Virus record (IMG/VR): IMGVR_UViG_3300046092_000062
Coordinates: 186,001 to 250,000 of that record
Reading direction: 5' to 3' (one strand)
DNA length: 64,000 nucleotides
The position numbers and the translations under genes were made by a program. Shown here one piece after another: positions 9,001 to 26,910 of the stretch; within the stretch, counting starts at the first letter, position 1; each line of letters starts with the position of its first letter. A model generated the notes under the pieces. It did no database searches and was not told the origin of the DNA. It worked only from the letters and a program-made list of their open reading frames with translations.

Positions 9001-9002
9001 AG

Positions 9003-9357: not shown

Positions 9358-9362
9358 AACGG

Positions 9363-9401: not shown

Positions 9402-9421
9402 AACGAAACAAAGGAACACAA

Positions 9422-13111: not shown

Positions 13112-13132
13112 ACACTTTTAAAGGAAAACATT

Positions 13133-13823: not shown

Positions 13824-13824
13824 C

Positions 13825-14034
13825 ATGACCACTAGCAAGATTGACCCAAGCGAGCTAACTCCTGAATGGGAACAAACAGGAGAGAACTCGTGGGTGGTCA
13901 CTTTAGCTGAAGACGGTGACGACATTGTTATGCCTATTCCCGACGAACTATTAGCTGCACAAGGGTGGGCCATTGGCGATACTCTTGTATGGGATATTCG
14001 AGATGATGGCACTATCTTTCTAACTAAGCAATGA
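13825..14034 (+). CDS. AbrB/MazE-like swapped-hairpin protein
   Basis: IVMPIPDELL..QGW.IGDTLVW pattern. Confidence 0.7.
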   Translation: MTTSKIDPSELTPEWEQTGENSWVVTLAEDGDDIVMPIPDELLAAQGWAIGDTLVWDIRDDGTIFLTKQ

Positions 14035-14594: not shown

Positions 14595-14684
14595 TATTAC
14601 CATAAGACTTGTTCTTATAGATAGCACTTTGCTATACTACAATCAGTTGTGCAAGACACAACAAATATTAAAGGAAATTACATT

Positions 14685-14972
14685 ATGACAACTATCAACT
14701 TAAAGCGTTTCGATTTAACTACTAAGCAAGGCAAATTGTTCAAAGCATTGGTCTTGGACAAGGAAGTTTTGAGCGAGGCACAAATTGCCAAGCGTTTCAG
14801 CATTGCTAACCCAACTGCTACCATCAGTGCAATCCGCCAACGTGGTTATGCCATTTACGGCAAGAGCCGCAAAGCAGGCAATGGCGTTCAAGTTACTGAA
14901 TACCGTTACGGCGAAGCTAGCCGCAAAATGGTTGCTATCGCTTACAAAGCAATGGCACAAGGTTTGGTCTAA
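14685..14972 (+). CDS. winged helix-turn-helix protein
   Basis: LSEAQIAKRFSIANPTATISAIRQRGY; AAGGA SD before ATG 14685. Confidence 0.65.
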   Translation: MTTINLKRFDLTTKQGKLFKALVLDKEVLSEAQIAKRFSIANPTATISAIRQRGYAIYGKSRKAGNGVQVTEYRYGEASRKMVAIAYKAMAQGLV

Positions 14973-14986
14973 TTCTAGACTGCTCC

Positions 14987-15009
14987 AAAAAGGCTCACAA
15001 GGGCCTTTT
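14987..15009 (+). terminator. intrinsic terminator
   Basis: AAAAGGCTC-ACAA-GGGCCTTTT. Confidence 0.7.
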
Positions 15010-15012
15010 CTC

Positions 15013-15041
15013 TTGACAAGATATTGGAATAGTGCTACAAT
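15013..15041 (+). promoter_or_regulatory. sigma70-type promoter
   Basis: TTGACA-17-TACAAT. Confidence 0.75.
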
Positions 15042-15064
15042 AGCACATTACTAAAGGAACTATC

Positions 15065-15907
15065 ATGCGTGTTAGCGTAATGAGTGATTTACACTTGGAT
15101 TTTGCAGACTTGACCTTGCCCGGAGGCGATGTTCTTATTCTCAGCGGTGACGTTTGCGAAGCCAAGCGTTTCAAGAAAGCAGATTACAACCCAGCAATGG
15201 TATTGCTAGAGCACGAGCGCAAAGACCAGCGCCCCGATCGTTGCAGCCGCTTCTTAGAGGAAGAGTGCGCCAAGTACCGCGAAGTCATTTACGTAATGGG
15301 TAACCATGAGCACTACGGTTACCAGTTCCACAAGACATACGATCACATCAAGAGCCAGTTGCCGTCTAACGTGCATCTGCTAGAGAAAGAATCGTACGAA
15401 ATTGATGGTGTAATATTCTTGGGCGGGACATTGTGGACTGATATGAACAATCATGATCAGCTTACACTATACCACATGAAGAGCATGATGAACGACTACC
15501 GTCAAGTAACTATGCTAAATGAGGCCAATGGTGCTTACCACAAGTTGCAGCCCGAGAAGACTGTGACTGAGCACATTAAGACCAAACAATACTTTACTCA
15601 GCAGTTGAGCGAGAACCGTATGAGTGGCCGTAACAAGCCAGTGGTGGTGTGTACCCATCACAGCCCTAGCAAGTTAAGCACTCATCCGCGTTACGCAGAC
15701 GATGTTATCATGAACGGTGCTTACAGCAGCGATCTCAGTGAGTTTATCTTAGACAATCCTGAGATCAAAGTTTGGACACACGGGCATACACATCATCAGT
15801 TTGACTACATGGTCGGTGACACTCGTGTTATTTGCAATCCACGTGGTTACAAAAACTATGAGCAACAAGCAGAAGAATTTGACCCAACATTTGGGTTCGA
15901 TATTTAA
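15065..15907 (+). CDS. calcineurin-like metallophosphoesterase
   Basis: SDLH, GDV, GNHE, THH, HGHTH motifs. Confidence 0.92.
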   Translation: MRVSVMSDLHLDFADLTLPGGDVLILSGDVCEAKRFKKADYNPAMVLLEHERKDQRPDRCSRFLEEECAKYREVIYVMGNHEHYGYQFHKTYDHIKSQLPSNVHLLEKESYEIDGVIFLGGTLWTDMNNHDQLTLYHMKSMMNDYRQVTMLNEANGAYHKLQPEKTVTEHIKTKQYFTQQLSENRMSGRNKPVVVCTHHSPSKLSTHPRYADDVIMNGAYSSDLSEFILDNPEIKVWTHGHTHHQFDYMVGDTRVICNPRGYKNYEQQAEEFDPTFGFDI

Positions 15908-15945
15908 CTCCTAGAGAGTTATCTTATTACATAAAGGAAATTAAA

Positions 15946-16500
15946 ATGAAAAAAATCTTAGCAATTTTAGCATTGGCTGTTATTTCTGCCACTGCAATGG
16001 CAGGCGATTCAGCAACAGTTGAATATCAAAATTTAAATAACATTGGGTCAGCTGATCAAAAGAATATCGGGCTGTCTGTTAAGCACGAGTTTTCACAATC
16101 AGTTGCAGGTGATATTGGCATTTCTAACACCGTCACTGAAGGCACAAGTGCATTGTCTACTCGCACAGAACTCGGTGCAACGTACTCGGCTCCGATCGGA
16201 TTTAATCTGAAAGGCTATGTGCGCGGCGCAATGGGCCAGAAGTTTACTAACACAGGAGACTACACTTACTACGCAGTTGAGCCGGGTGTTTCTACATCAT
16301 TTGGTGCTGTGACTGTTAAAGCTGGTTACCGTTACCGCTCGGCCATTGACCCAACTACTAATAACGACCAAACCCATACAGCACGAATTGGTGTTGCATA
16401 CGCATTGACCAAGAACGACACTGTTGGTTTACGCTTTGATCGTGTGCGCGGTGATTCTGTACAAAACGTTACAGCCGTTAACTACACACGCGGGTTCTAA
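15946..16500 (+). CDS. outer-membrane beta-barrel protein (porin-like)
   Basis: signal peptide ending AMA, amphipathic strands, C-terminal YTRGF beta-signal. Confidence 0.75.
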   Translation: MKKILAILALAVISATAMAGDSATVEYQNLNNIGSADQKNIGLSVKHEFSQSVAGDIGISNTVTEGTSALSTRTELGATYSAPIGFNLKGYVRGAMGQKFTNTGDYTYYAVEPGVSTSFGAVTVKAGYRYRSAIDPTTNNDQTHTARIGVAYALTKNDTVGLRFDRVRGDSVQNVTAVNYTRGF

Positions 16501-16509
16501 TCAAACCTG

Positions 16510-16555
16510 TTGACTTTAGTTAACACAGAGCCTATACTGCGGTATAGGCTTTTTT
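16510..16555 (+). terminator. terminator overlapping a promoter
   Basis: AGCCTATAC-TGCG-GTATAGGCT-T5; TTGACT(16510)-17-TATACT(16533). Confidence 0.75.
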
Positions 16556-16567
16556 ACGAGGTAAATT

Positions 16568-16948
16568 TTGGCATACATTTTAAATAATCACAAGCATACC
16601 GGCAACTTATTTGTTGGCACAGCAACTACAGCAGCTAATCCATATTCGGTTAGTGGGGCAAATGGATATACCAATACTACATGGACCACTGCCGCCAACC
16701 CAATGACTGTTACACAACAAGCAACTATCCAGCTAAATGGCGAAAAGGCAGACATTGTTATAAACGGCAAGAGTCTCAAGGATACGTTGGAGGCATTGGA
16801 ATCGAGGTTGGCCATGTTGAAACCTGATGTCTCACTCGAAACCGAATGGGCAGAACTAAAACGGTTAGGCGATGAATACCGTAAATTGGAACTAGAGATT
16901 AAGGAAAAGATGAAAACTTGGGACACCCTTAAGAACACCTCACTTTGA
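16568..16948 (+). CDS. hypothetical protein, C-terminal coiled coil
   Basis: TTG start after GAGG. Confidence 0.7.
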   Translation: MAYILNNHKHTGNLFVGTATTAANPYSVSGANGYTNTTWTTAANPMTVTQQATIQLNGEKADIVINGKSLKDTLEALESRLAMLKPDVSLETEWAELKRLGDEYRKLELEIKEKMKTWDTLKNTSL

Positions 16949-16973
16949 CACATAAAGGCATTTAGTGTATAAT
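16945..16973 (+). promoter_or_regulatory. consensus sigma70 promoter heading array II
   Basis: TTGACA-17-TATAAT. Confidence 0.85.
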
Positions 16974-16979
16974 AGTACT

Positions 16980-17162
16980 ATGAACTCTATCACAATCAAT
17001 GGTGCCGATAAGGCACTCGAAGCAGGCGGCTGGTGCAGAAAACAATTTGGTATTAAGGGATGGACAATAGACTTGAACAGTATGTTGGGCAACAATCCCA
17101 CGTATAGGTTTGATTTCTCTAGTCCCGCTGATGCTACACTATTTGCATTAAAATGGCGGTAA
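16980..17162 (+). CDS. LRW-family mini-protein II-1
   Basis: WCRKQFG; tail FSSPADATLFALKWR. Confidence 0.85.
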   Translation: MNSITINGADKALEAGGWCRKQFGIKGWTIDLNSMLGNNPTYRFDFSSPADATLFALKWR

Positions 17163-17410
17163 CTTTAGTCGTTCATGAATTTACACTAGGTGACGTAGAT
17201 GATCCCGAAATCTACGCAGCCGTGCCCTTGTATGAATGGCAATTGAGTGATGCCGGTAAATGGGTTATGGAAAATGCTATTGAAACTCCCCAGTGGGGCA
17301 GAATCAATGATCATCTCACGTACTCACTTCGTTACAGAGTAACTGCAAAGCTCAAAGATGAGGATGCAACCTTTTTCAAGTTAAAGTATGATCACACTAA
17401 CCGACGCTGA
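17153..17410 (+). CDS. LRW-family mini-protein II-2
   Basis: tail LKDEDATFFKLKY. Confidence 0.8.
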   Translation: MAVTLVVHEFTLGDVDDPEIYAAVPLYEWQLSDAGKWVMENAIETPQWGRINDHLTYSLRYRVTAKLKDEDATFFKLKYDHTNRR

Positions 17411-17615
17411 GTGGCGTAATATTAGAAATCAAATCAGAATTGAATACGCCGACAAGCCCAGTGTTTGGCTATTGCGCTCTGTAATGAAGCGTGAGTTAGG
17501 ATTTACTGACCGCCATCATCAAGTATACAGAGAACAAACAGGTTACATCACTACTGTCTACTTGGACTTCTTTAATGATGCAGCAGAAACAATGTTTAGA
17601 TTGAAGTACTTATAA
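17388..17615 (+). CDS. LRW-family mini-protein II-3
   Basis: tail FFNDAAETMFRLKYL. Confidence 0.8.
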   Translation: MITLTDAEWRNIRNQIRIEYADKPSVWLLRSVMKRELGFTDRHHQVYREQTGYITTVYLDFFNDAAETMFRLKYL

Positions 17616-17831
17616 TTGGAATTCATTGCACGTATACTGCCCAAGTTAATTGCTGGTGTCCTAAGCATTATGGATGCCAGTCGCTTGCGGGATAAAGTAT
17701 ACCAGCAACAACACGAGCATGAGTTGATGTGGACTGCACTAGATGATATCGCACGTATGCACCCAGATCATCCGTCAGGAAAAATGGCAAAGAAAACACT
17801 AGATGAAGTTACTACACGCTACGGTAGGTAG
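17616..17831 (+). CDS. hypothetical protein (non-LRW)
   Basis: 71-aa ORF abutting previous stop. Confidence 0.65.
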   Translation: MEFIARILPKLIAGVLSIMDASRLRDKVYQQQHEHELMWTALDDIARMHPDHPSGKMAKKTLDEVTTRYGR

Positions 17832-18219
17832 GTTTCAGGCATGGCGCCATGCACGTTACCTCAAAAAGAAGGGCTGGACCCAGCGCCAGTTTGACCTCAT
17901 CAACGATCCTGATTTTTGCGCACGTGGCAGCAGTATTCGTAAAGATGTCTATCGCGGCTATCCCTACTTAATCTCGTTTGACGACACAGTACCAATGGAA
18001 CGGCGATATGGTCAAGGATGGATCACCGTAGTTGATAATATGACAGCGTGGTGCGAAGCGAATGTTACAGGCAAATGGAGAGAAGATATCCTTGCAGTCG
18101 ACAAGAGTTGGGACGACGAATGGACGCAAGGGTGCATGGGCCTAAGCCACAACATTCTATTCTTTGCATTTAACAATGAGCAAGATGCAGTAATGTTTAG
18201 TCTATACTGGAGTGTGTAA
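17803..18219 (+). CDS. LRW-family protein II-4 with long N-terminal extension
   Basis: AWCEAN core; tail FNNEQDAVMFSLYWSV; start uncertain. Confidence 0.8.
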   Translation: MKLLHATVGRFQAWRHARYLKKKGWTQRQFDLINDPDFCARGSSIRKDVYRGYPYLISFDDTVPMERRYGQGWITVVDNMTAWCEANVTGKWREDILAVDKSWDDEWTQGCMGLSHNILFFAFNNEQDAVMFSLYWSV

Positions 18220-18437
18220 TGAACATCGAATTCAAACATCGCCCGGACCGATACTACGAGTGGGAAATGTACTACAGTCCACAGGGCCCCGAAATGGGCG
18301 AAGTATACGGTTGGTGCTGGGAAACATTCGGTCACCCAGGACTAGCATTAGGTAATGGAACTTGGGATAACCACGGCGGATGGATTAAGTTTCGCAGAGA
18401 AGAAGATATGACTATGTTTATGTTGAGGTGGAGCTAA
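18219..18437 (+). CDS. LRW-family mini-protein II-5
   Basis: WCWETFG; tail FRREEDMTMFMLRWS. Confidence 0.85.
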   Translation: MNIEFKHRPDRYYEWEMYYSPQGPEMGEVYGWCWETFGHPGLALGNGTWDNHGGWIKFRREEDMTMFMLRWS

Positions 18438-18703
18438 TGGAATTATTTTATGGTGGCGGCGGACGCAGTAACCCGGACTTTATACACAAGGTGCGGGTTA
18501 GCAAAAAACGTGCAGGTGATGTTAGTCCACTGATGAAGTGGTGCGACGATTACCCAACTGGTGATAAGGGCTACTTTAAACGCTACTACATCGATTGGCG
18601 TGGTGACACAAAGAGCTGGGATAGTGACTATGTTACATTCCAATTTGAATGGGAACAAGCTGCTATCATGTTTGCTCTAAGTTTTGCGGACAGCGTATGC
18701 TAA
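18437..18703 (+). CDS. LRW-family mini-protein II-6
   Basis: KWCDD; tail FEWEQAAIMFALSF. Confidence 0.8.
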   Translation: MELFYGGGGRSNPDFIHKVRVSKKRAGDVSPLMKWCDDYPTGDKGYFKRYYIDWRGDTKSWDSDYVTFQFEWEQAAIMFALSFADSVC

Positions 18704-18981
18704 CAACAGTAAGAATTTGGGTACTAGATCACAATGTTATCCCCGACCAATCCGATGTAGACTACTGCAAGAACAACGGCATACAACTAGACGCCCAGCA
18801 AGGTGAGCATCAGCGTATCGAAACTGGCAGCGGGCAGGTCTATCACTACCGCACCTCACCCGGGGTCATAAAGCTAACCACATTTGACGAGAAAAGCGAA
18901 TGTATGTTACAATTACGCTACGCAGGTAGAATCCATCTAATGCAACAAATTTACACCGAGTCTGTAACACATTCGTATTAA
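18697..18981 (+). CDS. divergent LRW-like protein II-7
   Basis: FDEKSECMLQLRY; similar to 2936. Confidence 0.65.
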   Translation: MLTTVRIWVLDHNVIPDQSDVDYCKNNGIQLDAQQGEHQRIETGSGQVYHYRTSPGVIKLTTFDEKSECMLQLRYAGRIHLMQQIYTESVTHSY

Positions 18982-19310
18982 TGAAAGTTCGTCTTAAAAA
19001 TGGCCGCATTGGAGAGCATCGCCTTAAGTGGGACAACAACCCAATGGGCATTGCGCCATTGCTAATAGGATCGGAGACTGTGGAATTGGATATCACTGAA
19101 CGAATTTACAACGGGCCCGACTGCTACCCGTGGCGCAAGACGTTTGCACTTTGGCCAGTTAAAACAATAGGTGGTAGCCGCATTTGGTTACGCACTGTTT
19201 ACAAACAACGATTCTGGGCAGTGTGGGGCAAAGGCTTTCACATGGAGCCCTGGGTTGAATATGCAACACTATTTGAGATTTTAAAACATGAACCTAAATC
19301 ATCTATCTGA
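18981..19310 (+). CDS. Trp-rich hypothetical protein (non-LRW)
   Basis: WRKTFALWPVKT.GG..IWL..VY. Confidence 0.75.
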   Translation: MKVRLKNGRIGEHRLKWDNNPMGIAPLLIGSETVELDITERIYNGPDCYPWRKTFALWPVKTIGGSRIWLRTVYKQRFWAVWGKGFHMEPWVEYATLFEILKHEPKSSI

Positions 19311-19764
19311 CGTAGAGCTGCTACGCTACTTGGATTTGACTAGCACTGATCCATTGGTTATTCGTTTGATCAACATGCTGTCTGCACCTAACGGTGGGCT
19401 TGTTGGTGATTTAGTGGAAGCAGGCATGGATCCTAACACATGGGTCTTTACAGACGATCACCAAGACTACTACCCCGGAGATTACATCACCCACTTGCAA
19501 AAGATGGTTGCCTACGCAGAAGATGACCGTGCGGTAGCCGAAATGGATTTAGCGGATGCTCGTGAAGAACTTGATAAGTTAAGTCGACGCACCGTTACAG
19601 AACTTCTAGTAGATGCGCAGCGGGCAATTGACTCTGCAAAATCCAATCACCTTTACGCAGTTAGAGAAGCTGAAAAAGCTCACGAAGTAATTGACAAGGT
19701 ACAAGCAGAGAATAGACATCTCAAAGAGCAATTGGGCATGTGGAATATTTTAGGGACAGAGTAA
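19288..19764 (+). CDS. coiled-coil hypothetical protein
   Basis: heptad-like C-terminal half. Confidence 0.75.
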   Translation: MNLNHLSDVELLRYLDLTSTDPLVIRLINMLSAPNGGLVGDLVEAGMDPNTWVFTDDHQDYYPGDYITHLQKMVAYAEDDRAVAEMDLADAREELDKLSRRTVTELLVDAQRAIDSAKSNHLYAVREAEKAHEVIDKVQAENRHLKEQLGMWNILGTE

Positions 19765-19765
19765 C

Positions 19766-20032
19766 ATGGACAACGTTATTCACAGCAACAAATATTTCCG
19801 ATTAACTAAATGGCGCCATCGCAAAAGCGACAAGGTGCATTATCGCGTTGAGATGACATACAGTTGGTTGAATCTGGACCAAGAAGCAGGGGAGAAAAGT
19901 TTTCCTGAGCAAGTTCGCGATGTAATCGACCCAACTCGTTGTCGTGCTGGGCAAGCTGGCAACCACTGGAAATACCGTAACTTAGAAGAAGCTACAAAAG
20001 CCTATACATTTTTAGTAATGAAATTCTCATGA
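19766..20032 (+). CDS. LRW-family mini-protein II-8 (divergent)
   Basis: tail YRNLEEATKAYTFLVMKFS. Confidence 0.7.
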   Translation: MDNVIHSNKYFRLTKWRHRKSDKVHYRVEMTYSWLNLDQEAGEKSFPEQVRDVIDPTRCRAGQAGNHWKYRNLEEATKAYTFLVMKFS

Positions 20033-20310
20033 GTTATAAACTTAAACTAGCACACAAGCATCACGATCAATTAGATCAAATTGAAGCATGGCTCAACGCT
20101 AACGTTGGCCCTGGTAGCAAACGACATGCAAACAACACCTGGCTCGGTGCCGAAGATTGGTACTGCTATGAAGAAGCACTAGTTCCGGGCAGCGAGGAAG
20201 AGGAAGAAGAGTATTACGACAACGATGACAATCTTGAAGATATTTCAGATTTGATCTTTGTATTCCGCCGCGAAAGCGATCTGTTAATGTTTAGTTTGAA
20301 ATGGGCATAG
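20029..20310 (+). CDS. LRW-family mini-protein II-9 with acidic insertion
   Basis: SEEEEEEYYDNDDNLED; tail FRRESDLLMFSLKWA; TAG stop. Confidence 0.85.
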   Translation: MSYKLKLAHKHHDQLDQIEAWLNANVGPGSKRHANNTWLGAEDWYCYEEALVPGSEEEEEEYYDNDDNLEDISDLIFVFRRESDLLMFSLKWA

Positions 20311-20311
20311 C

Positions 20312-20668
20312 ATGTCTAGTCCTTTTAAACTCACAGATCTCCCCAACAACACTTGGTCAGTAACATGGACCGAGAATAACTTTGCACATAATGCTAAACA
20401 GCGAGACAAGTTAGTAGATATTCTGTTTAGCGAAATTGGATGCCGCGACGTTGGCCTAGGCATTAAACTAAACAATGGCGAACTAGAAACACTGTGGATT
20501 GGTGAAAAAGAGTATTTTCAACGGTCCGACATAGCCCACGGATGGGAAGACATGTATGTTGTTCGTGGTGTTGTGTTCATTCACGAACACGAAGCTAGGG
20601 AGTTTCATCAATTGATGGAAAGTCGATTGGCTTGGTACTACTTAAAGCAAGGTGCAGCAGTTGCTTGA
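20312..20668 (+). CDS. divergent LRW-like protein II-10
   Basis: FIHEHEAREF followed by a helical extension. Confidence 0.65.
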   Translation: MSSPFKLTDLPNNTWSVTWTENNFAHNAKQRDKLVDILFSEIGCRDVGLGIKLNNGELETLWIGEKEYFQRSDIAHGWEDMYVVRGVVFIHEHEAREFHQLMESRLAWYYLKQGAAVA

Positions 20669-20879
20669 AATTCCATACCCAACCCTAATGAATGGCAGTC
20701 GCACGTTCTCTATGGAAACTCTACAAAAGTGGCTTGACGCACACTTTCCTCAAGAACGTTCCTGCATTGTCCGTGTTGCTATTGTTAACAAAGGGCCTGG
20801 GAGGTACGGCGACGAACGATGGGCGATTCGTTTTTATCGGGATGAAGATGCAACACTGTTTGGATTGTTATGGCAGTAA
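20652..20879 (+). CDS. LRW-family mini-protein II-11
   Basis: tail FYRDEDATLFGLLWQ; start GTG 20652 or ATG 20688. Confidence 0.8.
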   Translation: MQQLLEIPYPTLMNGSRTFSMETLQKWLDAHFPQERSCIVRVAIVNKGPGRYGDERWAIRFYRDEDATLFGLLWQ

Positions 20880-21127
20880 CCTATAAAACTAATCCGGGAT
20901 TCCCAGGTGTTAATTTTCCCGTGTTGCACCGTGTTGTCTATGCACACACCATCGATGGTGTCCCAGCACAATGGCAAATCAGCTACAAGGATTATATAGT
21001 CAATGAATGGCTTAAAGCAAACACACGCCATCCTTACTACCACAGTCCCGGGTATCTTCGTGAAAAGTTCATTGAGTTTGAATGTGATGAAGAAGCAGTG
21101 CTATTCGCACTAAAGTGGGCAAAGTAA
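20870..21127 (+). CDS. LRW-family mini-protein II-12
   Basis: tail FECDEEAVLFALKWAK. Confidence 0.85.
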   Translation: MAVTYKTNPGFPGVNFPVLHRVVYAHTIDGVPAQWQISYKDYIVNEWLKANTRHPYYHSPGYLREKFIEFECDEEAVLFALKWAK

Positions 21128-21357
21128 TGTACAGCAAGACTCACCGATTTTTTAAATTCAAACACGTTCCCAAGGACTTTATATGGGGCAGTGAGGAAAT
21201 TGACCTGTGCCGCCTGCACATTGGTGACAACCGTATCACGATGCCGCTTGTGGACCGCGAATGGTTTAGTTCGCCCGATGGTGTATGGATTCGACATGAT
21301 TGTCTGGATAACGAAATCATAACTTGGTTTGCACTGAAAGCAAGCAATGAAGTTTGA
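21127..21357 (+). CDS. LRW-family mini-protein II-13
   Basis: tail LDNEIITWFALKA. Confidence 0.75.
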   Translation: MYSKTHRFFKFKHVPKDFIWGSEEIDLCRLHIGDNRITMPLVDREWFSSPDGVWIRHDCLDNEIITWFALKASNEV

Positions 21358-21607
21358 ACTGCTAGAAGGGCGCATACACGGAGCCCGTTACTACACAGTT
21401 AGACCAGACTTTAATTGGTGGCTTTCGGGCAGCTTAAACAATACAAATGCCACCTGGCGTGATATGTTAGAATGGTGTGTAGAAGTATTCGGTCCTAGCG
21501 CAGAAATGGGTGTGTGGGAACCCGGTGCTCGTTGGTATGCTAACAATGCAAAGTTTTGGTTTCGTAATGCAGAAGATAGGACAGCGTTTTTGCTGAGATG
21601 GTCATGA
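21347..21607 (+). CDS. LRW-family mini-protein II-14
   Basis: EWCVEVFGP; tail FRNAEDRTAFLLRWS. Confidence 0.85.
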   Translation: MKFELLEGRIHGARYYTVRPDFNWWLSGSLNNTNATWRDMLEWCVEVFGPSAEMGVWEPGARWYANNAKFWFRNAEDRTAFLLRWS

Positions 21608-21837
21608 AACCAGACCTAGTCCAATTTTACTGCGAACGAGATCCCTATTACGCTAAATCACGTGAGTACTACATGATGAACGTAAATCATTACGAAACTC
21701 CTTATTACCTTTGGATGATACAGGAATATCGCACTGTGCTGTTAAACAAACAGGGTAGCTGGAGCGACAGGGCTGAACAGCATTGGGGCTTTATTAATGA
21801 ATCGGATAGAACAATTTTTATGTTGAGATGGTCATGA
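21604..21837 (+). CDS. LRW-family mini-protein II-15
   Basis: tail FINESDRTIFMLRWS. Confidence 0.85.
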   Translation: MKPDLVQFYCERDPYYAKSREYYMMNVNHYETPYYLWMIQEYRTVLLNKQGSWSDRAEQHWGFINESDRTIFMLRWS

Positions 21838-22064
21838 CAACTACTGTTGAATTTGGTAAAGATCGTTATCACTTACAGGGTGAAATGGAAGAATGGTGCG
21901 AGCACAATATTGGGTCTAATCCTCGTTATAGCAACCACGTTTGGTCCAAGCCAGTTGAGTGGGAAGGGTTAGGCACATGGTGCATGGCTAGTGCGTTTGG
22001 CACAACATTTTTCTACTTTAAACATCGCAAAGATGCAACCTTCTTTGCATTGAAATGGAAATAA
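21834..22064 (+). CDS. LRW-family mini-protein II-16
   Basis: EWCEHNIG; tail FKHRKDATFFALKWK. Confidence 0.85.
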   Translation: MTTTVEFGKDRYHLQGEMEEWCEHNIGSNPRYSNHVWSKPVEWEGLGTWCMASAFGTTFFYFKHRKDATFFALKWK

Positions 22065-22065
22065 T

Positions 22066-22428
22066 ATGGATGATCGGAATCTTTGGCACCTGCTATGTGA
22101 TTGGGTAAAATTTGGTAAGTTTATAGAATGGAAAGAATGGTTTTACTGGACCATTGTGCCTGGCACTAGCATTGGGGTCATTTGGCCAAATGGCCCAATT
22201 TCTCTGGGTTGTGATCCTGATGGCGAAGAGGTAATCGTCGACTCCGCTGATCCAAACGATCACTATCGCCCATGGTTAGAAGAGCATGTCGGGCGTCAGG
22301 GCATTGATTGGGAATGGAGAATGGGAACTTTTGGATTTTGGACAGATGAAATAGATACTCTAGACATTAAGTTTCGAGTGGGAAAGACAAAGTATGCTAC
22401 AATAGCAGCATTGATGTGGGGCCAATGA
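22066..22428 (+). CDS. LRW-family protein II-17, extended N-terminus
   Basis: WLEEHVG core; tail KYATIAALMWGQ. Confidence 0.75.
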   Translation: MDDRNLWHLLCDWVKFGKFIEWKEWFYWTIVPGTSIGVIWPNGPISLGCDPDGEEVIVDSADPNDHYRPWLEEHVGRQGIDWEWRMGTFGFWTDEIDTLDIKFRVGKTKYATIAALMWGQ

Positions 22429-22628
22429 GAACCAAAACTACAAGAGAACTATATCCGTACCATGTGCGCTTTAAGCGTACAGGAGATTGGTATGGCAATG
22501 ATGGTACTTGGTATCAAATTAGCACATGGCTTCGAGAACACTTTGGGCAGAATTGGGAATATCTTGACAGTATGTTTATGTTCTCTAAGGAAGAACACAA
22601 AATGCTTTTTATAATGAGATGGCTATGA
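22425..22628 (+). CDS. LRW-family mini-protein II-18
   Basis: WLREHFG; tail FSKEEHKMLFIMRWL. Confidence 0.85.
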   Translation: MRTKTTRELYPYHVRFKRTGDWYGNDGTWYQISTWLREHFGQNWEYLDSMFMFSKEEHKMLFIMRWL

Positions 22629-23044
22629 CAAAACGCAACACCGTAGTAATGGATATCGAAACCACAACAGCAGTAATGCCGCGTGGGTCTTCTTCTGTTT
22701 TTCAGGGCATCACAGGTGGAATACATCCTGGAGAAATGATGATTTATGCCGGGGGCAGACAAACTGGCAAGTCCACACTGTCTTACCATATATTAAAGAG
22801 CAGATACTACGAAATGGGCATCAAGGAACAAATCCAGACGTTGGATACGTTTACACTAGATGGTGCTACATGGTACACTGTACACTGTCGTCCTTCGACT
22901 ATTAGTGGGTGGGTGCAAGAGCAAGACTCCGATATGTGGTGCCGACACTACAACACAGGCGCACTGCGAGTTGAATACCCCACGTTTAACAACTACAACA
23001 TACACGAAGAACTGTATTCAATGTTATTGTTGAAATGGTCATGA
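22625..23044 (+). CDS. LRW-family protein II-19 with DnaB-like Walker A fragment
   Basis: GGIHPGEMMIYAGGRQTGKST; tail IHEELYSMLLLKWS. Confidence 0.8.
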   Translation: MTKRNTVVMDIETTTAVMPRGSSSVFQGITGGIHPGEMMIYAGGRQTGKSTLSYHILKSRYYEMGIKEQIQTLDTFTLDGATWYTVHCRPSTISGWVQEQDSDMWCRHYNTGALRVEYPTFNNYNIHEELYSMLLLKWS

Positions 23045-23406
23045 AAATCTTAAAACAAACTGTAGCAGCTAAGACTTGCACCCTCAAAGCCAATTGGACT
23101 ATTGATCGCTCAGCAGACAATAGCTTTACGATCGGTGATGATACGTGGCAAGAGGTTGGGGCAGCACTACGAAAAGAGATTGATGAAGAAATTGTTAACA
23201 ATATTAGAAGGCATGAGCTTATGTTAAAAGGATGGGTCAAGGCCCCGTTTACTAGCGACAAGTTTGCTACACCAGGCAACCACCAGATAGCAGAAGTTAC
23301 TGCATGGATTCACATGAACACCACGGCGCAATATCAAATCTTCGGCCGAGAGTTCTGGTTCTCAAGCAAGGAAGACTTAACACTGTTTGTACTGAGGTGG
23401 GCATGA
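23041..23406 (+). CDS. LRW-family protein II-20 with major-capsid (gp23-like) fragment
   Basis: ILKQTVAAKT..LKANWT...AAL.KEIDEEIV; tail FSSKEDLTLFVLRWA. Confidence 0.8.
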   Translation: MKILKQTVAAKTCTLKANWTIDRSADNSFTIGDDTWQEVGAALRKEIDEEIVNNIRRHELMLKGWVKAPFTSDKFATPGNHQIAEVTAWIHMNTTAQYQIFGREFWFSSKEDLTLFVLRWA

Positions 23407-23630
23407 GCTATACACTGTACCCCGACGAAGACATTCTAAAGAAGCAACGATATATCGTTAAGTACAGAGGGAGCCTGTATGGGCACCGCGACGAGATGCT
23501 TGCCTGGTGTGTAGAACAGTTTGGTCCACATTCACATGCCTACAAAAATCCACGATGGAGTGAAAACTGGGACCGATTCTGCTTTAAGAATGAAAGCGAC
23601 ATGATGCTGTTTATGTTGAGATGGTCATGA
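23403..23630 (+). CDS. LRW-family mini-protein II-21
   Basis: WCVEQFGP; tail FKNESDMMLFMLRWS. Confidence 0.85.
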   Translation: MSYTLYPDEDILKKQRYIVKYRGSLYGHRDEMLAWCVEQFGPHSHAYKNPRWSENWDRFCFKNESDMMLFMLRWS

Positions 23631-23893
23631 CAGATACAGATAAATTAGAGTGGTCAGATATTTGCCGCCATGAGCATAAGTGCAAGGGTGATGAATTGTT
23701 ATATCACACTGTGCCTAGCTATAGTGTATATGTCAGGGCATCTAAATGGTTGCGGGAAGAGCGTGGGTACAAGTTTATCAGCGTAGAGGGTGAAACGGAA
23801 GAACATAGTGCTGGTTGGCGTTACACGGGTAGGTATACTTTTAAGTTCTTGTGCGAGCAAGAGTATATGTGGTTTAAGTTGAGGTGGTCGTGA
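23627..23893 (+). CDS. LRW-family mini-protein II-22 (close paralogue of 8389)
   Basis: tail RYTGRYTFKFLCEQEYMWFKLRWS. Confidence 0.85.
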   Translation: MTDTDKLEWSDICRHEHKCKGDELLYHTVPSYSVYVRASKWLREERGYKFISVEGETEEHSAGWRYTGRYTFKFLCEQEYMWFKLRWS

Positions 23894-24180
23894 TGAGTAG
23901 ACCAGGTTTTAATTCACAAGAGTGGTTTCGGGCCAAGCATGACCCAAAACATGATATGGTACATGGCGATAGACTGTATTACGTTGAGCCAGGTTGCGAA
24001 TACGGGTTCAAAGAAGATGACGGATATGTGTGGAATCGCATAAGCTGTAGCTATTGGTTCGGGGACTGGATTGAAGAAAATGGCGGTGAGGGACGTTGGC
24101 GAGCATACGGCGGCAGGCATCGTGCTATCTACATTGTGCGCGAAGACCTACTAGCGTTTATTAAGTTAAAGTGGCTATGA
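23893..24180 (+). CDS. LRW-family mini-protein II-23
   Basis: DWIEENG; tail VREDLLAFIKLKWL. Confidence 0.8.
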   Translation: MSRPGFNSQEWFRAKHDPKHDMVHGDRLYYVEPGCEYGFKEDDGYVWNRISCSYWFGDWIEENGGEGRWRAYGGRHRAIYIVREDLLAFIKLKWL

Positions 24181-24377
24181 AATACTGGAACAAAGACAAA
24201 CGTGTTCGGCAAAACCATTGGTATACAATTACTTCGCCTACATGGTGGTCGTATGCTGATACTAAACTAGAGTTGCAGAGATTTGACAGTCCGGGTAAGT
24301 TTTATCTATATTACGGCAGTAGAACAATTTGGTTTGAGCGTGAACAAGACGCAGTATTTTTTAGATTGAAGATGTGA
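24177..24377 (+). CDS. LRW-family mini-protein II-24
   Basis: tail FEREQDAVFFRLKM. Confidence 0.8.
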   Translation: MKYWNKDKRVRQNHWYTITSPTWWSYADTKLELQRFDSPGKFYLYYGSRTIWFEREQDAVFFRLKM

Positions 24378-24378
24378 T

Positions 24379-24570
24379 ATGAAGCAATATGGCCTAGCGA
24401 TTGAACGTTGGGGGCATCCACGTAAGGCAACTATATGGCATTGGCTTAAACAAAACTTTGGCCCCGAGGGTGATCGTTGGGGCACACAGTATGACTACGG
24501 ACTGGACAATCTCTGGATGAATGAAGATGTTTACATCATGTATAAATTAAAATGGGAACAACATGACTGA
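24379..24570 (+). CDS. LRW-family mini-protein II-25
   Basis: WLKQNFGP; tail MNEDVYIMYKLKW. Confidence 0.8.
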   Translation: MKQYGLAIERWGHPRKATIWHWLKQNFGPEGDRWGTQYDYGLDNLWMNEDVYIMYKLKWEQHD

Positions 24571-24961
24571 TAAGAATACCTCAGATCAAATGAAAATCTT
24601 GATCCCAATGATCCGTAAGGTCATGCCCACAATGATCGCAACTGACATCATTGGTGTGCAGACAATGGATATGGGAATCGAACTTGAAACCGGGGAGACT
24701 TACGTGGATGAAGCCGCTAGTCATGCAACCGAAAACAACATCGTGGAATGGTATTGGGCACGATTGCCCCTGTCTGCAGGAGCATTCTGGAACATCAAAG
24801 GAACCCAGGCGCATTACAAACAAGTTGATGCATGGTGTGAAGAAACATTCGGACCACGCTGCTCCAACGAGCATCCTGAATTTATATGGGATAAAATTAA
24901 CTACCGTTATTGCTTTAAACATTCCGAAGATAGGACAGCATTCGTGCTGAAGTGGGGCTAA
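24563..24961 (+). CDS. LRW-family protein II-26 with major-capsid Gol-region fragment
   Basis: ILIPMIRKVMPTMIATDIIGVQTM; WCEETFGP; tail FKHSEDRTAFVLKWG. Confidence 0.85.
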   Translation: MTDKNTSDQMKILIPMIRKVMPTMIATDIIGVQTMDMGIELETGETYVDEAASHATENNIVEWYWARLPLSAGAFWNIKGTQAHYKQVDAWCEETFGPRCSNEHPEFIWDKINYRYCFKHSEDRTAFVLKWG

Positions 24962-24998
24962 TATTTCACGCTACGTACTGCCAACACAGTCCGAGCAA

Positions 24999-25175
24999 AT
25001 GGACGCATGGTTCAATGGCGGGCACTTAATTGTGCTAACAGACATTATGTATTGGAGCGCTCACTACCAAGACTTAGCAGACTGGTGTAAAGGAAACGAT
25101 TCCCAAGTGCAAGGAATGACAGTGGTAGTACCCAATGAAAAAGTATTAACTTTATTCTGCCTACGCTGGTCGTAA
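24999..25175 (+). CDS. LRW-family mini-protein II-27 (58 aa, missing from track)
   Basis: hand translation MDAWFNGG...ADWCKG...VPNEKVLTLFCLRWS. Confidence 0.75.
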   Translation: MDAWFNGGHLIVLTDIMYWSAHYQDLADWCKGNDSQVQGMTVVVPNEKVLTLFCLRWS

Positions 25176-25185
25176 TAAGTACAGT

Positions 25186-26394
25186 ATGATCCACCCATTC
25201 TCCGACAAAAATAAGTTCGGATACTACACAATCGGTCAGTATACCACTTACTCAAAGCTAGAAGCATTTGAGATTTCTTCAAAGACTCAACAACCTATTA
25301 GTAGATATTTCAATGATGAAGTCTACACCGCTGCTAATCCGTTAAACGAGCCTCCGTTATCACTGTGGGAATACTACACCCAACGAGCTCAACAGATTCG
25401 CAACAGTTATGATTATGTAGTTGTTATGTACAGCGGCGGAGCAGATAGCAAAACTGTGCTTGACTCATTTGTTAAAAACAACATTCATGTAGATGAGATT
25501 GCTCAGTTTACACATGCAGAGGGTTCGGGCAAAAACGCATTCATGGATAGAGAAGTTTGGAAAGTGGCAGCGCCAACTACTCAAGCAATCGTTGACAACA
25601 ACCCACTCACTAAGCATAGACTCATTGATGTATCTAAGCATTACTACTCGCAGTTTGATGACGCAAACTTTAAATTTGACTTTATCTACCAAGTAAACAA
25701 TTTCCTGCACCCACTTGCTAGTATCCGATGCAGATTAAGAGAATATGTCGACGATTGGAAACATATCATCGATTCTGGAAAAAGATTATGTTTAGTGTGG
25801 GGAGGTGAAAAGCCATTGGTATTTTACAGCGGTATACACAAAAAGCACGTTTTTATGTTTTCTGACTGTATTGATAATATGGTACCACCGTCTGTTCAGC
25901 AAGAGAATAACCCCGGATGGTTTGATGAGTTGTTTTACTGGACTCCGGACATGCCCGAGATTGCAATTAAACAGGCGCACGTTGTAAAAAACTGTTTTAG
26001 GGATCCTACTAATTCTCTTGGTTACTTAGAAAGGACCAAGGCACCGTCAGCATCAGCATTTGAACAAATTGTAAATGAAGATGCCAATCGACGCAGTGGT
26101 TCGACTGTTATCAATGGCGTTAGGTGGTTTTTGAAACGCGAAGCGTTGCATCAATTGATATACCCTACATGGAATCCGTACACGTTTTCAGACGGAAAAC
26201 CCCCGTCTATTATTACACATCCACGTGACCAATGGTTCTGGAACGACACTAGTGCATTAAATACTGCACGGACTAACTATATGCAGGGCATTGTAAAGTT
26301 TAAACAAATGGTTCCAGTTTCTGCACTAAAAGACCCAACTAATTTTGAAACTGGTTTGAAATTTATTAATACTAAAATGTACCCTGTAGAATAA
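25186..26394 (+). CDS. PP-loop (adenine nucleotide alpha-hydrolase) family protein
   Basis: VVMYSGGADS PP-loop; 402 aa; TAAGTA at 25176. Confidence 0.7.
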   Translation: MIHPFSDKNKFGYYTIGQYTTYSKLEAFEISSKTQQPISRYFNDEVYTAANPLNEPPLSLWEYYTQRAQQIRNSYDYVVVMYSGGADSKTVLDSFVKNNIHVDEIAQFTHAEGSGKNAFMDREVWKVAAPTTQAIVDNNPLTKHRLIDVSKHYYSQFDDANFKFDFIYQVNNFLHPLASIRCRLREYVDDWKHIIDSGKRLCLVWGGEKPLVFYSGIHKKHVFMFSDCIDNMVPPSVQQENNPGWFDELFYWTPDMPEIAIKQAHVVKNCFRDPTNSLGYLERTKAPSASAFEQIVNEDANRRSGSTVINGVRWFLKREALHQLIYPTWNPYTFSDGKPPSIITHPRDQWFWNDTSALNTARTNYMQGIVKFKQMVPVSALKDPTNFETGLKFINTKMYPVE

Positions 26395-26397
26395 TAG

Positions 26398-26426
26398 TTG
26401 CGCTAAATGGCATCATATGCTATAAT
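26398..26426 (+). promoter_or_regulatory. sigma70-type promoter
   Basis: TTGCGC-17-TATAAT with extended TG. Confidence 0.7.
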
Positions 26427-26431
26427 ACAGT

Positions 26432-26647
26432 ATGGAAAAGAAAATCAAATGGCTACACGAAGGTACACTACTTCGTGCCACTGTGCCCGTTGCACCACGT
26501 GGATTTGAAAGATCCCTTCGCGAAGAAGACATGGATCCAATCCAAGAATGGTGTGACGAAGTTGGGTACGGACGCCGCATGAGCTTTGACACGTTTAAAT
26601 TTAAAACACAGGCAGAGATAACTGCATTTCTACTAAAATGGTCTTAA
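26432..26647 (+). CDS. LRW-family mini-protein II-28
   Basis: EWCDE; tail FKTQAEITAFLLKWS. Confidence 0.85.
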   Translation: MEKKIKWLHEGTLLRATVPVAPRGFERSLREEDMDPIQEWCDEVGYGRRMSFDTFKFKTQAEITAFLLKWS

Positions 26648-26910
26648 TCGACAATGACATCAGCAGCATGTACCCAGGCAGCGTTGAAAACCCAAGAAGC
26701 AGAGTATTTTGGGCACAAATTGATGAGGAACATCGCATGAGAGTACTAAACAAGAAGTATTGGCCGTATCATGTTAAAGCCGAGACAACCGATAAACAAG
26801 AGCGCTGGTGCTATGAGAATCTCAAAAGTAGCGAATGGCGTAATGTTGGCAGTTACTTTGCATTCAAGCGAGAGCAAGATGCAATGATGTTTACACTAAA
26901 GTGGTCCTAA
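26638..26910 (+). CDS. LRW-family mini-protein II-29
   Basis: N-term DISSMYP; RWCYENL; tail FKREQDAMMFTLKWS. Confidence 0.85.
   Translation: MVLIDNDISSMYPGSVENPRSRVFWAQIDEEHRMRVLNKKYWPYHVKAETTDKQERWCYENLKSSEWRNVGSYFAFKREQDAMMFTLKWS

What the first reader, a model, noticed from the sequence alone, without database searches (positions are those of the whole stretch)
22625..23044. Replicative-helicase Walker A fragment fused to an LRW module
Seen: GITGGIHPGEMMIYAGGRQTGKSTL, with no downstream Walker B or helicase core before the LLLKWS tail; upstream VVMDIET resembles an exonuclease DxE motif. Established: GG..PGE..I.AG....GKS is the DnaB/T4 gp41 H1 motif. It is too short to be a helicase, so it is a captured peptide (inference).
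Basis: partly seen in the sequence, partly recalled or inferred. Interest (0 to 1): 0.75.

Follow-up and report, generated by a model that had tools for sequence, protein, structure and literature searches.

The report
Helicase P-loop relic on LRW protein
A small, conserved gene of an uncultured freshwater jumbo phage joins a roughly 35-residue leftover of a helicase/RecA-type ATP-binding motif to an undescribed phage-only "LRW" domain. Several sister genes carry leftovers of the capsid protein or ribonucleotide reductase instead, so this looks like a recurring, unexplained habit of a very large gene family.

Summary
It is more than chance: a profile of the ORF and its relatives aligns to the H1/Walker A motif of the phage's own gp41-like helicase (hhalign 87.5 %, E 3.6e-6). 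The helicase is also the best match among 181 long ORFs (0 of 100 shuffles reach its score).

There is no Walker B and no helicase core. Residues about 70-141 are a divergent copy of a ~65-aa "LRW" domain. About 41 tandem, translationally coupled paralogs in this genome share that domain, as do 2,792 protein clusters in metagenomes. It is absent from Pfam and PHROGs, from solved structures by sequence, and from sequenced phage isolates as far as one canonical member was searched.

The gene is under purifying selection (dN/dS 0.17). The GG..G…GKS core survives in relatives only 20-40 % identical, so the fragment is kept rather than junk.

Sister LRW genes carry fragments of the major capsid protein (two in this window) and of the NrdA N-terminus. 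The reading of VVMDIET as an exonuclease motif is at chance level. An RNR-like stretch (aa 15-37) is borderline.

The function is unknown. My best guess (about 0.35) is a displayed mimic of a conserved core-protein segment. The rivals are a working phosphate-binding loop and a decaying relic.

The parts
22619..23044 (+). Target gene, 141 aa from the ATG at 22619. The likelier start is the ATG at 22625, which overlaps the upstream stop (ATGA).
   Evidence: ORF list and sequence. Junction alignment. Orthologs at 78-87 % identity, two of which start at MTK. dN/dS 0.17 against the ortholog in L006. Identical contigs in independent samples.
22700..22801 (+). RecA/DnaB-superfamily H1 segment (aa 28-61): ..GG.xPGE..I.AGG...GKST plus the start of helix alpha1.
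   Evidence: hhalign to the own gp41-like helicase aa 163-190, 87.5 %, E 3.6e-6. hmmsearch E 8e-4. PHROG UvsX-like and DnaB-like hits. PDB FlaH E 0.013. Shuffle test 0/100.
22751..22777 (+). Walker A-like loop GGRQTGKST (aa 45-53).
   Evidence: Read directly from the sequence. G46, R47, Q48, T49, G50 and S52 are invariant among the orthologs and P0006. G50 and S52 are invariant, and K51 nearly so, across the wider subfamily including L009, L010, P0088 and P0012. The RQTGKST heptapeptide also occurs in the own TerL, but the DNA is not identical.
22661..22729 (+). RNR-large-subunit-like stretch (aa 15-37). Borderline; it overlaps the start of the H1 segment.
   Evidence: phrog_84 E 0.003, phrog_3844 E 0.037, Pfam Ribonuc_red_lgC E 0.084. 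The own NrdA aa 613-636 is the top hit among 181 ORFs, but 5 of 60 shuffles reach the score. Absent from P0006, L010 and P0012.
22643..22663 (+). VVMDIET (aa 9-15). No assignable origin.
   Evidence: No significant similarity to the own PolB ExoI motif, the helicase Walker B or any long ORF. A similar VVYDIE occurs in P0088 only.
22826..23041 (+). Divergent LRW domain (aa ~70-141): beta-hairpin, two helices, a strand, and a C-terminal helix ending LLLKWS.
   Evidence: Alignments A1 and A3. AF2 pLDDT 75-84 for this part. The nearest ESM-Atlas shapes are 83-87-aa viral hypothetical proteins, TM 0.58-0.59. The leave-one-out family HMM gives only E 0.056, so this is a divergent member. dN/dS 0.07.
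23030..23044 (+). Junction TTGAAATGGTCATGA: the last codons of the gene, its stop, and the overlapping start of the next LRW gene.
   Evidence: Alignment of 30 junctions. The consensus TTGAGGTGGKCATGA is a Shine-Dalgarno-like GAGGTGG plus an ATGA overlap.
4842..26910 (+). Array of at least 30 LRW-family genes, interrupted by a few other genes. About 41 family members in the whole genome.
   Evidence: Strong sigma-70-like promoters lie on the + strand inside the array and no T4 late-promoter motif occurs in the window.
23035..23406 (+). Next paralog. Its aa 3-58 are a fragment of the major capsid protein (own MCP aa 151-210, 43 % identity).
   Evidence: Pfam Gp23 E 7e-5 and phrog_138. blastp E 2.8e-7. 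Shuffle test 99 against 44 +/- 4. tblastn hits lie under features annotated as capsid proteins where the record is annotated.
24563..24961 (+). Paralog whose aa 11-35 are the most conserved N-terminal gp23 segment (own MCP aa 59-83, 56 % identity).
   Evidence: Pfam Gp23 E 3.2e-6, above the cut-off. blastp E 1.4e-5. Shuffle test 86 against 40 +/- 4. tblastn to RaK2-type MCPs.
20870..21127 (+). Paralog whose orthologs in other phages begin with the first 31 residues of NrdA. The copy in this window has decayed.
   Evidence: P0196 aa 1-31 against own NrdA aa 1-31: score 63 against a null of 39 +/- 4, 0/100. The window copy is not significant.

Best explanation
What it is (confidence about 0.85).
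This is a genuine, conserved gene in a translationally coupled array of small genes in a freshwater T4-like jumbo phage. Its timing (early) is not known. The product has two parts.
1. A C-terminal LRW domain of about 70 aa. It is a divergent copy of an undescribed, phage-restricted alpha/beta module that exists in about 41 paralogs here and in thousands of metagenomic clusters.
2. An N-terminal extension of about 70 aa. Its core (aa 28-61) descends from the beta1 / Walker A / alpha1 element of a RecA/DnaB-superfamily ATPase, most like the phage's own gp41-type helicase. It cannot be a helicase or any complete NTPase.

How it most likely works (inference, confidence about 0.35).
The LRW domain is the stable, folded body of a fast-diversifying family. 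The N-terminal extension is a flexible, displayed copy of one of the most invariant segments of a core phage protein. In this gene that is the P-loop face of a RecA-type ATPase. In sister genes it is a conserved stretch of the major capsid protein or the NrdA N-terminus.

Such a segment would compete for whatever normally binds it on the full-length protein. That could be a host sensor of conserved phage proteins, or a partner or assembly factor of the parent protein, possibly that of a co-infecting relative.

Shown: the homology of the fragment, its conservation, the family context and the array architecture. Inferred: early expression, display, and mimicry.
For: Homology of the fragment
- hhalign 87.5 %, E 3.6e-6 to the own helicase H1 motif.
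- The helicase is the first non-self hit in the phage proteome, E 8e-4.
- Shuffle test 0/100.
- PHROG and PDB profile hits are all RecA/DnaB/KaiC-type.
- All 40 listed weak tblastn hits in phage isolates that carry an annotation lie in helicase, primase-helicase, RecA or UvsX genes.

The gene is real and constrained
- dN/dS is 0.17 overall, 0.27 for aa 1-81 and 0.07 for aa 82-141.
- Identical sequence occurs in independent samples.

The fragment is retained over deep time
- The P-loop core persists in lineages only 20-40 % identical overall: P0006, the L010/L011 ORF, P0088 and P0012 keep GG and GKS, and the L009 ortholog keeps TGKST after losing GG.

The pattern recurs in the family
- MCP fragments occur in two paralogs of this window, with Gp23 Pfam hits in three of the 150 representatives scanned and matches to the own MCP in others (P0035, P0129, P0148, P0149).
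- NrdA N-terminus fragments occur in P0196 and P0254.

The segment is displayed rather than folded
- AF2 gives pLDDT below 50 for aa 1-54 in the deeper model, while the LRW part reaches 75-84.

Setting and turnover
- Perfect or near-perfect sigma-70-like promoters lie on the coding strand, and there is no T4 late-promoter motif in 64 kb.
- Neighbouring genes are NAMPT, DNA ligase and a clamp loader.
- Whole-gene gains and losses occur at junctions in relatives.

Background from the literature
- Bacterial STAND/Avs receptors are reported to sense MCP, DNA polymerase and the RecA-type ATPase domain of primase-helicases and RecA (PMC13581612).
- The most conserved gp23 segment (Gol) is the trigger of the Lit system (PMC3014915).
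Against: - There is no experimental or computed evidence of any binding partner. The co-folding test with the own helicase returned 'no answer'.
- The known Avs sensors recognise folded domains over large interfaces (PMC13581612). A 35-residue piece from the core of a RecA fold is not an obvious surface epitope.
- A copy of a trigger peptide could harm the phage rather than protect it.
- One ortholog has GES instead of GKS (P0005). The L009 ortholog has lost about 30 N-terminal residues and the GG pair.
- The NrdA fragment of the sister gene has decayed in this very phage, which shows that captured pieces are not always maintained.
- Early transcription is inferred from consensus matches only. 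The promoter count is not above the shuffled expectation.
- The metatranscriptome contigs come from relatives and could be DNA carry-over.
Confidence: 0.35

Rival explanations
1. Working mini P-loop. The beta / Walker A / alpha element still binds phosphate (a nucleotide, polyphosphate or nucleic-acid backbone). The LRW domain supplies folding or oligomerisation, so the protein is a small ligand- or nucleic-acid-binding factor rather than a mimic.
For: The residues that stay invariant are those that make a phosphate-binding loop: G33 and G34, G50, K51 (nearly invariant) and S52, followed by a predicted helix at aa 53-68. They persist across lineages 20-40 % identical. From my own knowledge, not tested here, isolated beta-(P-loop)-alpha polypeptides have been reported to bind nucleotides and nucleic acids when they self-assemble.
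Against: There is no Walker B, catalytic Glu or Arg finger. P0005 has K51 replaced by E. In L009 the first Walker glycine and the GG pair are lost. AF2 gives low confidence for the loop. This explanation covers only this subfamily, not the capsid and NrdA fragments of sister genes.
Confidence: 0.2
2. Relic of recombination. The LRW domain alone is the functional unit. The N-terminal piece is debris from an illegitimate recombination event that happened to provide an in-frame leader, and it is drifting away.
For: Constraint is weaker on the N-terminus: dN/dS is 0.27 for aa 1-81 and 0.42 for aa 9-61, against 0.07 for the LRW part. The N-terminus is predicted disordered. The L009 ortholog is truncated. 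The NrdA fragment of a sister gene is decaying. The array recombines at its junctions. Many LRW paralogs have no extension.
Against: dN/dS is still well below 1. The motif survives in proteins whose remaining sequence has diverged to 20-40 % identity, where neutral sequence would be unrecognisable. The conserved positions coincide with the functional positions of the parent motif.
Confidence: 0.25
3. The fragment comes from the large terminase (Q-motif plus Walker A) rather than a helicase, and the protein interferes with or is linked to DNA packaging.
For: The exact heptapeptide RQTGKST is shared with the own TerL Walker A. P0006 and P0088 have a Y/W-Q pair about 25 residues upstream of the loop, as terminases do (the terminase pattern is from my own knowledge).
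Against: TerL scores only 4.6 bits (E about 2-4) against the N-terminal profile, while the helicase scores E 8e-4. No terminase family appears among the Pfam or PHROG hits. The DNA of the shared heptapeptide matches at 16 of 21 positions, differing at five mostly synonymous sites, so there was no recent exchange. The GG..PGE..I.AG part has no counterpart in TerL.
Confidence: 0.08

Closest known systems
DnaB / T4 gp41 replicative helicases, and the wider RecA/KaiC/UvsX ATPases
   Same: It shares the H1 region: the GG..G.. strand, the Walker A GxxxxGKS/T loop and the start of the following helix. Profile-profile support points to the phage's own helicase.
   Different: Only about 35 of about 300 core residues are present. 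There is no Walker B, H3, H4, arginine finger or N-terminal domain. The protein is 141 aa against 479 aa. The rest of the protein is an unrelated domain.
Hyperplastic regions and tandem small-gene families of T4-like and jumbo phages
   Same: A long run of small, same-strand, tightly packed genes of unknown function, with overlapping stops and starts, sits next to nucleotide-metabolism and replication genes and shows rapid gain and loss.
   Different: Here about 41 genes belong to one family. That family has no entry in Pfam or PHROGs, and several members carry recognisable pieces of core genes. One canonical member found no match in sequenced phage isolates.
Gol peptide of T4 gp23 (trigger of the Lit protease through EF-Tu)
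   Same: Sister genes (24563-24961; P0035, P0129, P0040) display the most conserved N-terminal gp23 segment. The literature describes Gol as the most conserved gp23 region (PMC3014915).
   Different: This concerns the paralogs, not the target gene. The equivalence of the two segments rests on my recollection of the T4 coordinates and was not verified. No Lit-like system is known for the unknown host.
Phage anti-defence proteins that work by mimicry or sequestration (DNA mimics, signal sponges, antitoxin mimics)
   Same: They are small, diversifying phage proteins. The proposed mechanism is competition for a binding site.
   Different: No described anti-defence protein that I found consists of a fragment of the phage's own conserved core protein on a carrier domain (literature searches). 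No functional data exist for LRW proteins.

Membership tests
DnaB/gp41-type replicative helicase | H1 / Walker A motif in the characteristic GG..G..x.I.G.xGxGKS/T context | tested here: met
   hhalign 87.5 %, E 3.6e-6 to the own helicase aa 163-190. hmmsearch E 8e-4.
DnaB/gp41-type replicative helicase | Walker B (H2), H3 and H4 motifs and a complete RecA-like core of about 250-300 residues | tested here: not met
   The Pfam DnaB_C match covers only model positions 10-45 of 255, at E 0.053, below the cut-off. Residues after aa 69 align with LRW paralogs. Aa 3-27 show no Walker B-like match.
DnaB/gp41-type replicative helicase | N-terminal primase-interacting domain; length about 450-500 aa | tested here: not met
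   The protein is 141 aa, while the own helicase is 479 aa with PF20307 and PF03796.
Self-contained small P-loop NTPase domain | Walker A plus Walker B on a folded alpha/beta core that reaches a curated family threshold | tested here: not met
   The best Pfam hits are AAA_14 at 15.9 bits (cut-off 27) and DnaB_C at 13.3 bits (cut-off 27). AF2 pLDDT is below 50 for aa 1-54. The Foldseek PDB search has no match at E <= 0.001 (best E 0.27), and VIA-align finds nothing at Z >= 5.
LRW small-protein family (defined here: profile A3) | C-terminal ~65-aa module: YYTV-like hairpin, W..WC.E.FG helix, F.F strand, and E.D...F.LRW helix ending within 1-3 residues of the stop | tested here: met
   It aligns over its whole length and ends in LLLKWS. 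The predicted topology is the same and the nearest Atlas shapes are viral 83-87-aa proteins. It is a divergent member: the leave-one-out HMM gives E 0.056. It is linked by relatives P0088 and P0012, which have the same N-terminal motif and a canonical LRW domain (E 5.9e-8 and 1.3e-9).
LRW small-protein family (defined here: profile A3) | Position in the tandem array, with the ATGA / Shine-Dalgarno junction to both neighbours | tested here: met
   ATGA overlaps occur at 22625-22628 and 23041-23044.
Family B DNA polymerase 3'-5' exonuclease (ExoI DxE) | ExoI motif within an exonuclease domain, with ExoII and ExoIII | tested here: not met
   Only D-I-E is present. There is no significant similarity to the own PolB (aa 106 FDIEV) or to any profile.
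Ribonucleotide reductase large subunit | Barrel domain; here only the conserved loop around own NrdA aa 613-636 | tested here: inconclusive
   phrog_84 E 0.003 and Pfam E 0.084. The own NrdA is the top of 181 ORFs, but 5 of 60 shuffles reach the score. The stretch is 23 residues and is not conserved in the wider subfamily.

The most novel reading that the evidence does not exclude
The LRW array is a phage-encoded library of displayed 'self-epitopes'. Each carrier domain presents one of the most invariant segments of a core phage protein: the RecA/helicase P-loop, the Gol-like and other capsid segments, or an RNR segment. These are made before the real proteins appear. They would occupy or blunt host pattern-recognition receptors that sense those proteins, or poison the homologous assemblies of competing phages. 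This would be a new class of counter-defence or inter-phage weapon, built by repeatedly capturing fragments of the phage's own genes.
Probability: 0.12. Interest if true: 0.9.

Novelty: new variant of a known kind. Interest (0 to 1): 0.62.

Why it matters
If the fragments are functional, this is a simple and evolvable way for a virus to turn its own most constrained sequences into tools. Those are the sequences that immune sensors are known to exploit. The LRW family would then be a large untapped source of such tools.

Even if the function turns out differently, three things stand. First, the work defines a very large, unannotated phage protein family: 2,792 clusters at 50 % identity and about 41 copies in one genome. 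Second, it shows how the array is built, with the C-terminal codons doubling as the ribosome-binding site of the next gene. Third, it documents repeated in-frame capture of pieces of core genes. That bears on how new phage genes arise and on annotation, because such ORFs give weak 'capsid' or 'helicase' hits that are easily misread.

Tried and rejected
1. Exonuclease DxE reading of VVMDIET, and my own idea that it is the helicase Walker B strand. Neither has significant similarity.
2. Complete small P-loop family. No family reaches threshold and the model is not folded there.
3. Terminase origin. There is an exact RQTGKST match to the own TerL, but the profile prefers the helicase and the DNA is not identical.
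4. PolB motif B (KIQLNSIYG, gene 8089-8385) and motif A (DISSMYPG, gene 26638-26910) seen by eye in two paralogs. They are not significant by the shuffle test and have no profile hit, so I do not count them.
5. AlphaFold with only seven close sequences gave pLDDT 41 and was unusable.
6. Co-folding of the protein with the own helicase returned 'no answer', which is evidence neither way.
7. Fold searches of the LRW domain found nothing. Foldseek PDB gave a best E of 0.27, VIA-align wide a best Z of 3.9 (ACT-like, generic), and the ESM Atlas returned only other viral hypothetical proteins. The profile against PDB sequences found nothing.
8. Sequenced phage isolates: no DNA match to the region, and no tblastn match to a canonical LRW member.
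9. Names from source databases were all 'hypothetical'.
10. The literature search for fragment decoys found no precedent.
11. Evidence of transcription. One metatranscriptome holds contigs of relatives over parts of the array, but DNA carry-over cannot be excluded.
Full report
Where the window lies.
The window is bases 186,001-250,000 of a 320,767-bp viral contig, estimated 92 % complete. The contig encodes a gp23-type major capsid protein (MCP), a gp41-like helicase, class I NrdA, a family B DNA polymerase and a T4-type large terminase. It is therefore a T4-like jumbo phage. It has no close relative among 50,697 sequenced phage records. Near-identical DNA turns up in more than twenty freshwater metagenomes.

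The observation.
The ORF at 22619-23044 (+) encodes 141 aa. The upstream gene's TGA overlaps an ATG at 22625 (ATGA). Contigs from two other freshwater samples cover the gene without a single difference. Comparison with the ortholog on a 354-kb contig (87 % identity) gives dN/dS of 0.17. This is a real protein-coding gene on the + strand.

Is the P-loop segment more than chance?
Yes, on five counts.
- A profile of the ORF and eight relatives, compared with a profile of the phage's own helicase, aligns aa 28-54 to helicase aa 163-190, the H1/Walker A motif. The probability is 87.5 % and the E-value 3.6e-6.
- An HMM of the N-terminal 66 residues, searched against all 2,174 ORFs of the genome, finds that helicase first (E 8e-4). 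A RecA/UvsX-like ORF comes next, at E 0.13.
- In a Smith-Waterman test of aa 1-81 against the 181 ORFs of at least 200 aa, the helicase is the best hit. Its score is 65 against a null of 46.6 +/- 4.1, and no shuffle in 100 reaches it.
- PHROG profiles give UvsX-like at E 6.4e-4 and DnaB-like at E 4.6e-3. The best solved-structure relative is the RecA/KaiC-type ATPase FlaH, at E 0.013.
- All of the listed weak tblastn hits in phage isolates that carry an annotation fall in helicase, primase-helicase, RecA or UvsX genes.

The source is therefore a RecA/DnaB-superfamily ATPase, with the helicase the best single candidate. One oddity remains: the heptapeptide RQTGKST is identical to the Walker A of the phage's own terminase. 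The DNA there differs, however, and the terminase scores far lower against the profile.

What is not supported.
VVMDIET has no significant similarity to the phage's PolB ExoI motif, to the helicase Walker B strand or to anything else.

The stretch at aa 15-37 resembles the conserved loop of RNR large subunits (phrog_84 E 0.003, Pfam E 0.084). The own NrdA aa 613-636 is the top hit among the 181 long ORFs, but 5 of 60 shuffles do as well. The stretch is also missing from the more distant relatives. I call it borderline.

The rest of the protein: the LRW family.
Residues about 70-141 align with the C-terminal ~65 residues of the neighbouring genes. A leave-one-out HMM finds about 41 such ORFs in the genome at E < 0.01, almost all in window 4,400-26,900 on the + strand. 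The target itself is a divergent member, at E 0.056.

The domain has a YYTV-like hairpin, a W..WC.E.FG helix, an F.F strand and a final helix E.D...F.LRW that stops one to three residues before the stop codon.

The paralog profile finds 2,792 clusters at 50 % identity with E <= 0.001 among 1.84 billion representatives. None of the listed relatives has a Pfam domain, and all but one of those that carry a name are called 'hypothetical'. Neither Pfam nor PHROGs has the domain. Isolate phages lack it.

With 150 sequences, AlphaFold models aa 70-141 at pLDDT 75-84, in the order strand, strand, helix, helix, strand, helix. It leaves aa 1-54 below 50. Foldseek against the PDB, VIA-align and a PDB sequence profile give no convincing relative. 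The ESM Atlas returns only other short viral proteins.

How the array is built.
An alignment of 30 gene ends gives the consensus TTG AGG TGG KCA TGA. The codons for L-R-W spell a Shine-Dalgarno-like GAGGTGG, and the stop overlaps the next start (ATGA). The genes are therefore translationally coupled. The protein motif is kept even where no gene follows and other codons are used.

Relatives seen in other samples skip whole genes exactly at these junctions, so the array expands and contracts by recombination there.

Several perfect or near-perfect sigma-70-type promoters lie on the coding strand inside the array, for example at 16945 with 12 of 12 matches. The T4 late-promoter octamer is absent from all 64 kb. 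Neighbouring genes are NAMPT, an ATP-dependent DNA ligase, a phosphoesterase and a clamp-loader ATPase. This fits early or middle expression but does not prove it. One metatranscriptome contains contigs of relatives over parts of the array, and DNA carry-over cannot be excluded.

The fragment is old and kept.
Beyond the 78-87 % orthologs, several more distant proteins share the pattern. Most have the N-terminal GG..PGE…G(R)xxGKS element followed by an LRW domain:
- P0006 (39 % identical);
- an ORF on two 175-300-kb contigs (L010 and L011);
- P0088;
- P0012.
The L009 ortholog keeps only a degenerate G…TGKST.

Across all of them G34, G50 and S52 are invariant, and G33, G38 and K51 are nearly so. 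The surrounding sequence has diverged to 20-40 % identity. Neutral sequence would not stay recognisable over that distance, and dN/dS of the N-terminal half is 0.27.

The signal is not uniform, though. One ortholog has GES in place of GKS. The L009 ortholog has lost about 30 N-terminal residues and the GG pair.

The same habit in sister genes.
- The next gene (23035-23406) begins with a copy of own-MCP aa 151-210: 43 % identity, E 2.8e-7, shuffle score 99 against 44 +/- 4.
- Gene 24563-24961 begins with own-MCP aa 59-83, the most conserved N-terminal gp23 segment: 56 % identity, with the Pfam Gp23 match above its cut-off.
- Their tblastn hits fall under features annotated as capsid proteins in the records that carry annotation, in jumbo and T4-like isolates.
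- Metagenomic LRW proteins carry the same two MCP segments, plus the MCP propeptide region and the C-terminal FYCPYVPL segment.
- Orthologs of gene 20870-21127 start with the first 31 residues of NrdA (score 63 against 39 +/- 4). The copy in this phage has decayed beyond recognition.
- Two by-eye resemblances to PolB motifs A and B in other paralogs did not pass any test.

In-frame capture of pieces of core genes at the N-terminus of LRW genes is therefore recurrent. Some captures are maintained and some decay.

What it does.
Nothing here measures function. The anatomy is a folded carrier domain of a fast-diversifying family. It carries a flexible N-terminal copy of a highly invariant piece of a core protein, and that piece is retained over deep time.

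My preferred reading (about 0.35) is molecular mimicry. The displayed segment competes for something that binds the same segment on the full-length protein. Bacterial receptors that sense MCP, DNA polymerase and RecA-type ATPase domains are documented (PMC13581612). The most conserved gp23 segment is the classical Lit/EF-Tu trigger (PMC3014915). The source proteins therefore match known sensor targets.

Against this, known sensors read whole folds, the P-loop lies in the core of the RecA fold, and a trigger copy could backfire.

The rivals are:
- a still-functional phosphate-binding loop (0.2), which explains the conserved glycines, lysine and serine but not the sister genes;
- a slowly decaying recombination relic (0.25), which is supported by the weaker constraint, the truncation in L009 and the decayed NrdA piece;
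- a terminase rather than helicase origin (0.08).

The co-folding test with the own helicase gave no answer.

Comparison and novelty.
The gene is not a member of the DnaB/gp41 family, because only the H1 feature is met. It is not a complete P-loop domain either. It is a member, though a divergent one, of a large family that no database describes.

I found no published description of phage proteins built from fragments of the phage's own conserved core proteins on a common carrier. I therefore rate it a new variant of known kinds: small-gene arrays of large phages, and gene-fragment fusions. There is a modest chance (about 0.12) that it represents a new counter-defence or competition principle.

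Noticed in passing
window 1515-1589 (+): A tRNA gene with anticodon CUA, a potential amber suppressor (ARAGORN calls it tRNA-Pyl; Rfam tRNA 66.7 bits). TAG is the rarest stop among long ORFs of the genome (19 of 268). Whether the phage reads TAG through late in infection was not examined.
   Followed up: partly
window 4842-26910, gene junctions (e.g. 23030-23044): The last codons of LRW genes (TTG AGG TGG KCA TGA) encode L-R-W-S/A-stop. At the same time they form a Shine-Dalgarno-like GAGGTGG and an ATGA stop/start overlap for the next gene. The protein motif and the translation signal of the neighbour share the same bases.
   Followed up: yes
window 23389-23614, 23406-23910, 24175-24378, 21093-22246: Contigs of related phages in other samples skip whole LRW genes, with breakpoints at the gene junctions. 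This indicates frequent gain and loss by recombination between junction repeats.
   Followed up: partly
window 24563-24961 and 23035-23406: Two LRW paralogs start with fragments of the major capsid protein (own MCP aa 59-83 and 151-210). By my recollection the first corresponds to the Gol region of T4 gp23, the Lit/EF-Tu trigger. I did not verify the T4 coordinates.
   Followed up: partly
window 20870-21127; proteins P0196, P0189, P0254: Orthologs of this LRW gene in other phages begin with the first 31 residues of NrdA, position 1 aligned to position 1. The copy in this window has decayed. This suggests capture of a gene start, followed by drift.
   Followed up: yes
window 59-1462: A nicotinamide phosphoribosyltransferase (NAMPT) gene, i.e. 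NAD salvage, lies a few kb upstream of the array. Such genes have been linked to countering NAD-depleting defences.
   Followed up: no
window 25186-26394: A 402-aa ORF with an SGGxDS PP-loop motif and no Pfam hit. It has a paralog at genome 151137-152324. It interrupts the LRW array.
   Followed up: no
L010 and L011 1887-2351: In two related contigs a 154-aa ORF lies about 150 bp upstream of the first gene of the LRW cluster (about 0.6 kb upstream of the P-loop-bearing gene). By eye it looks like a macro-domain (ADP-ribose-binding) protein. It was not scanned against any family library.
   Followed up: no
proteins P0008 and P0045: Some metagenomic proteins contain two LRW domains in tandem. 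They are probably fusions of neighbouring array genes caused by loss of the stop at the junction.
   Followed up: no
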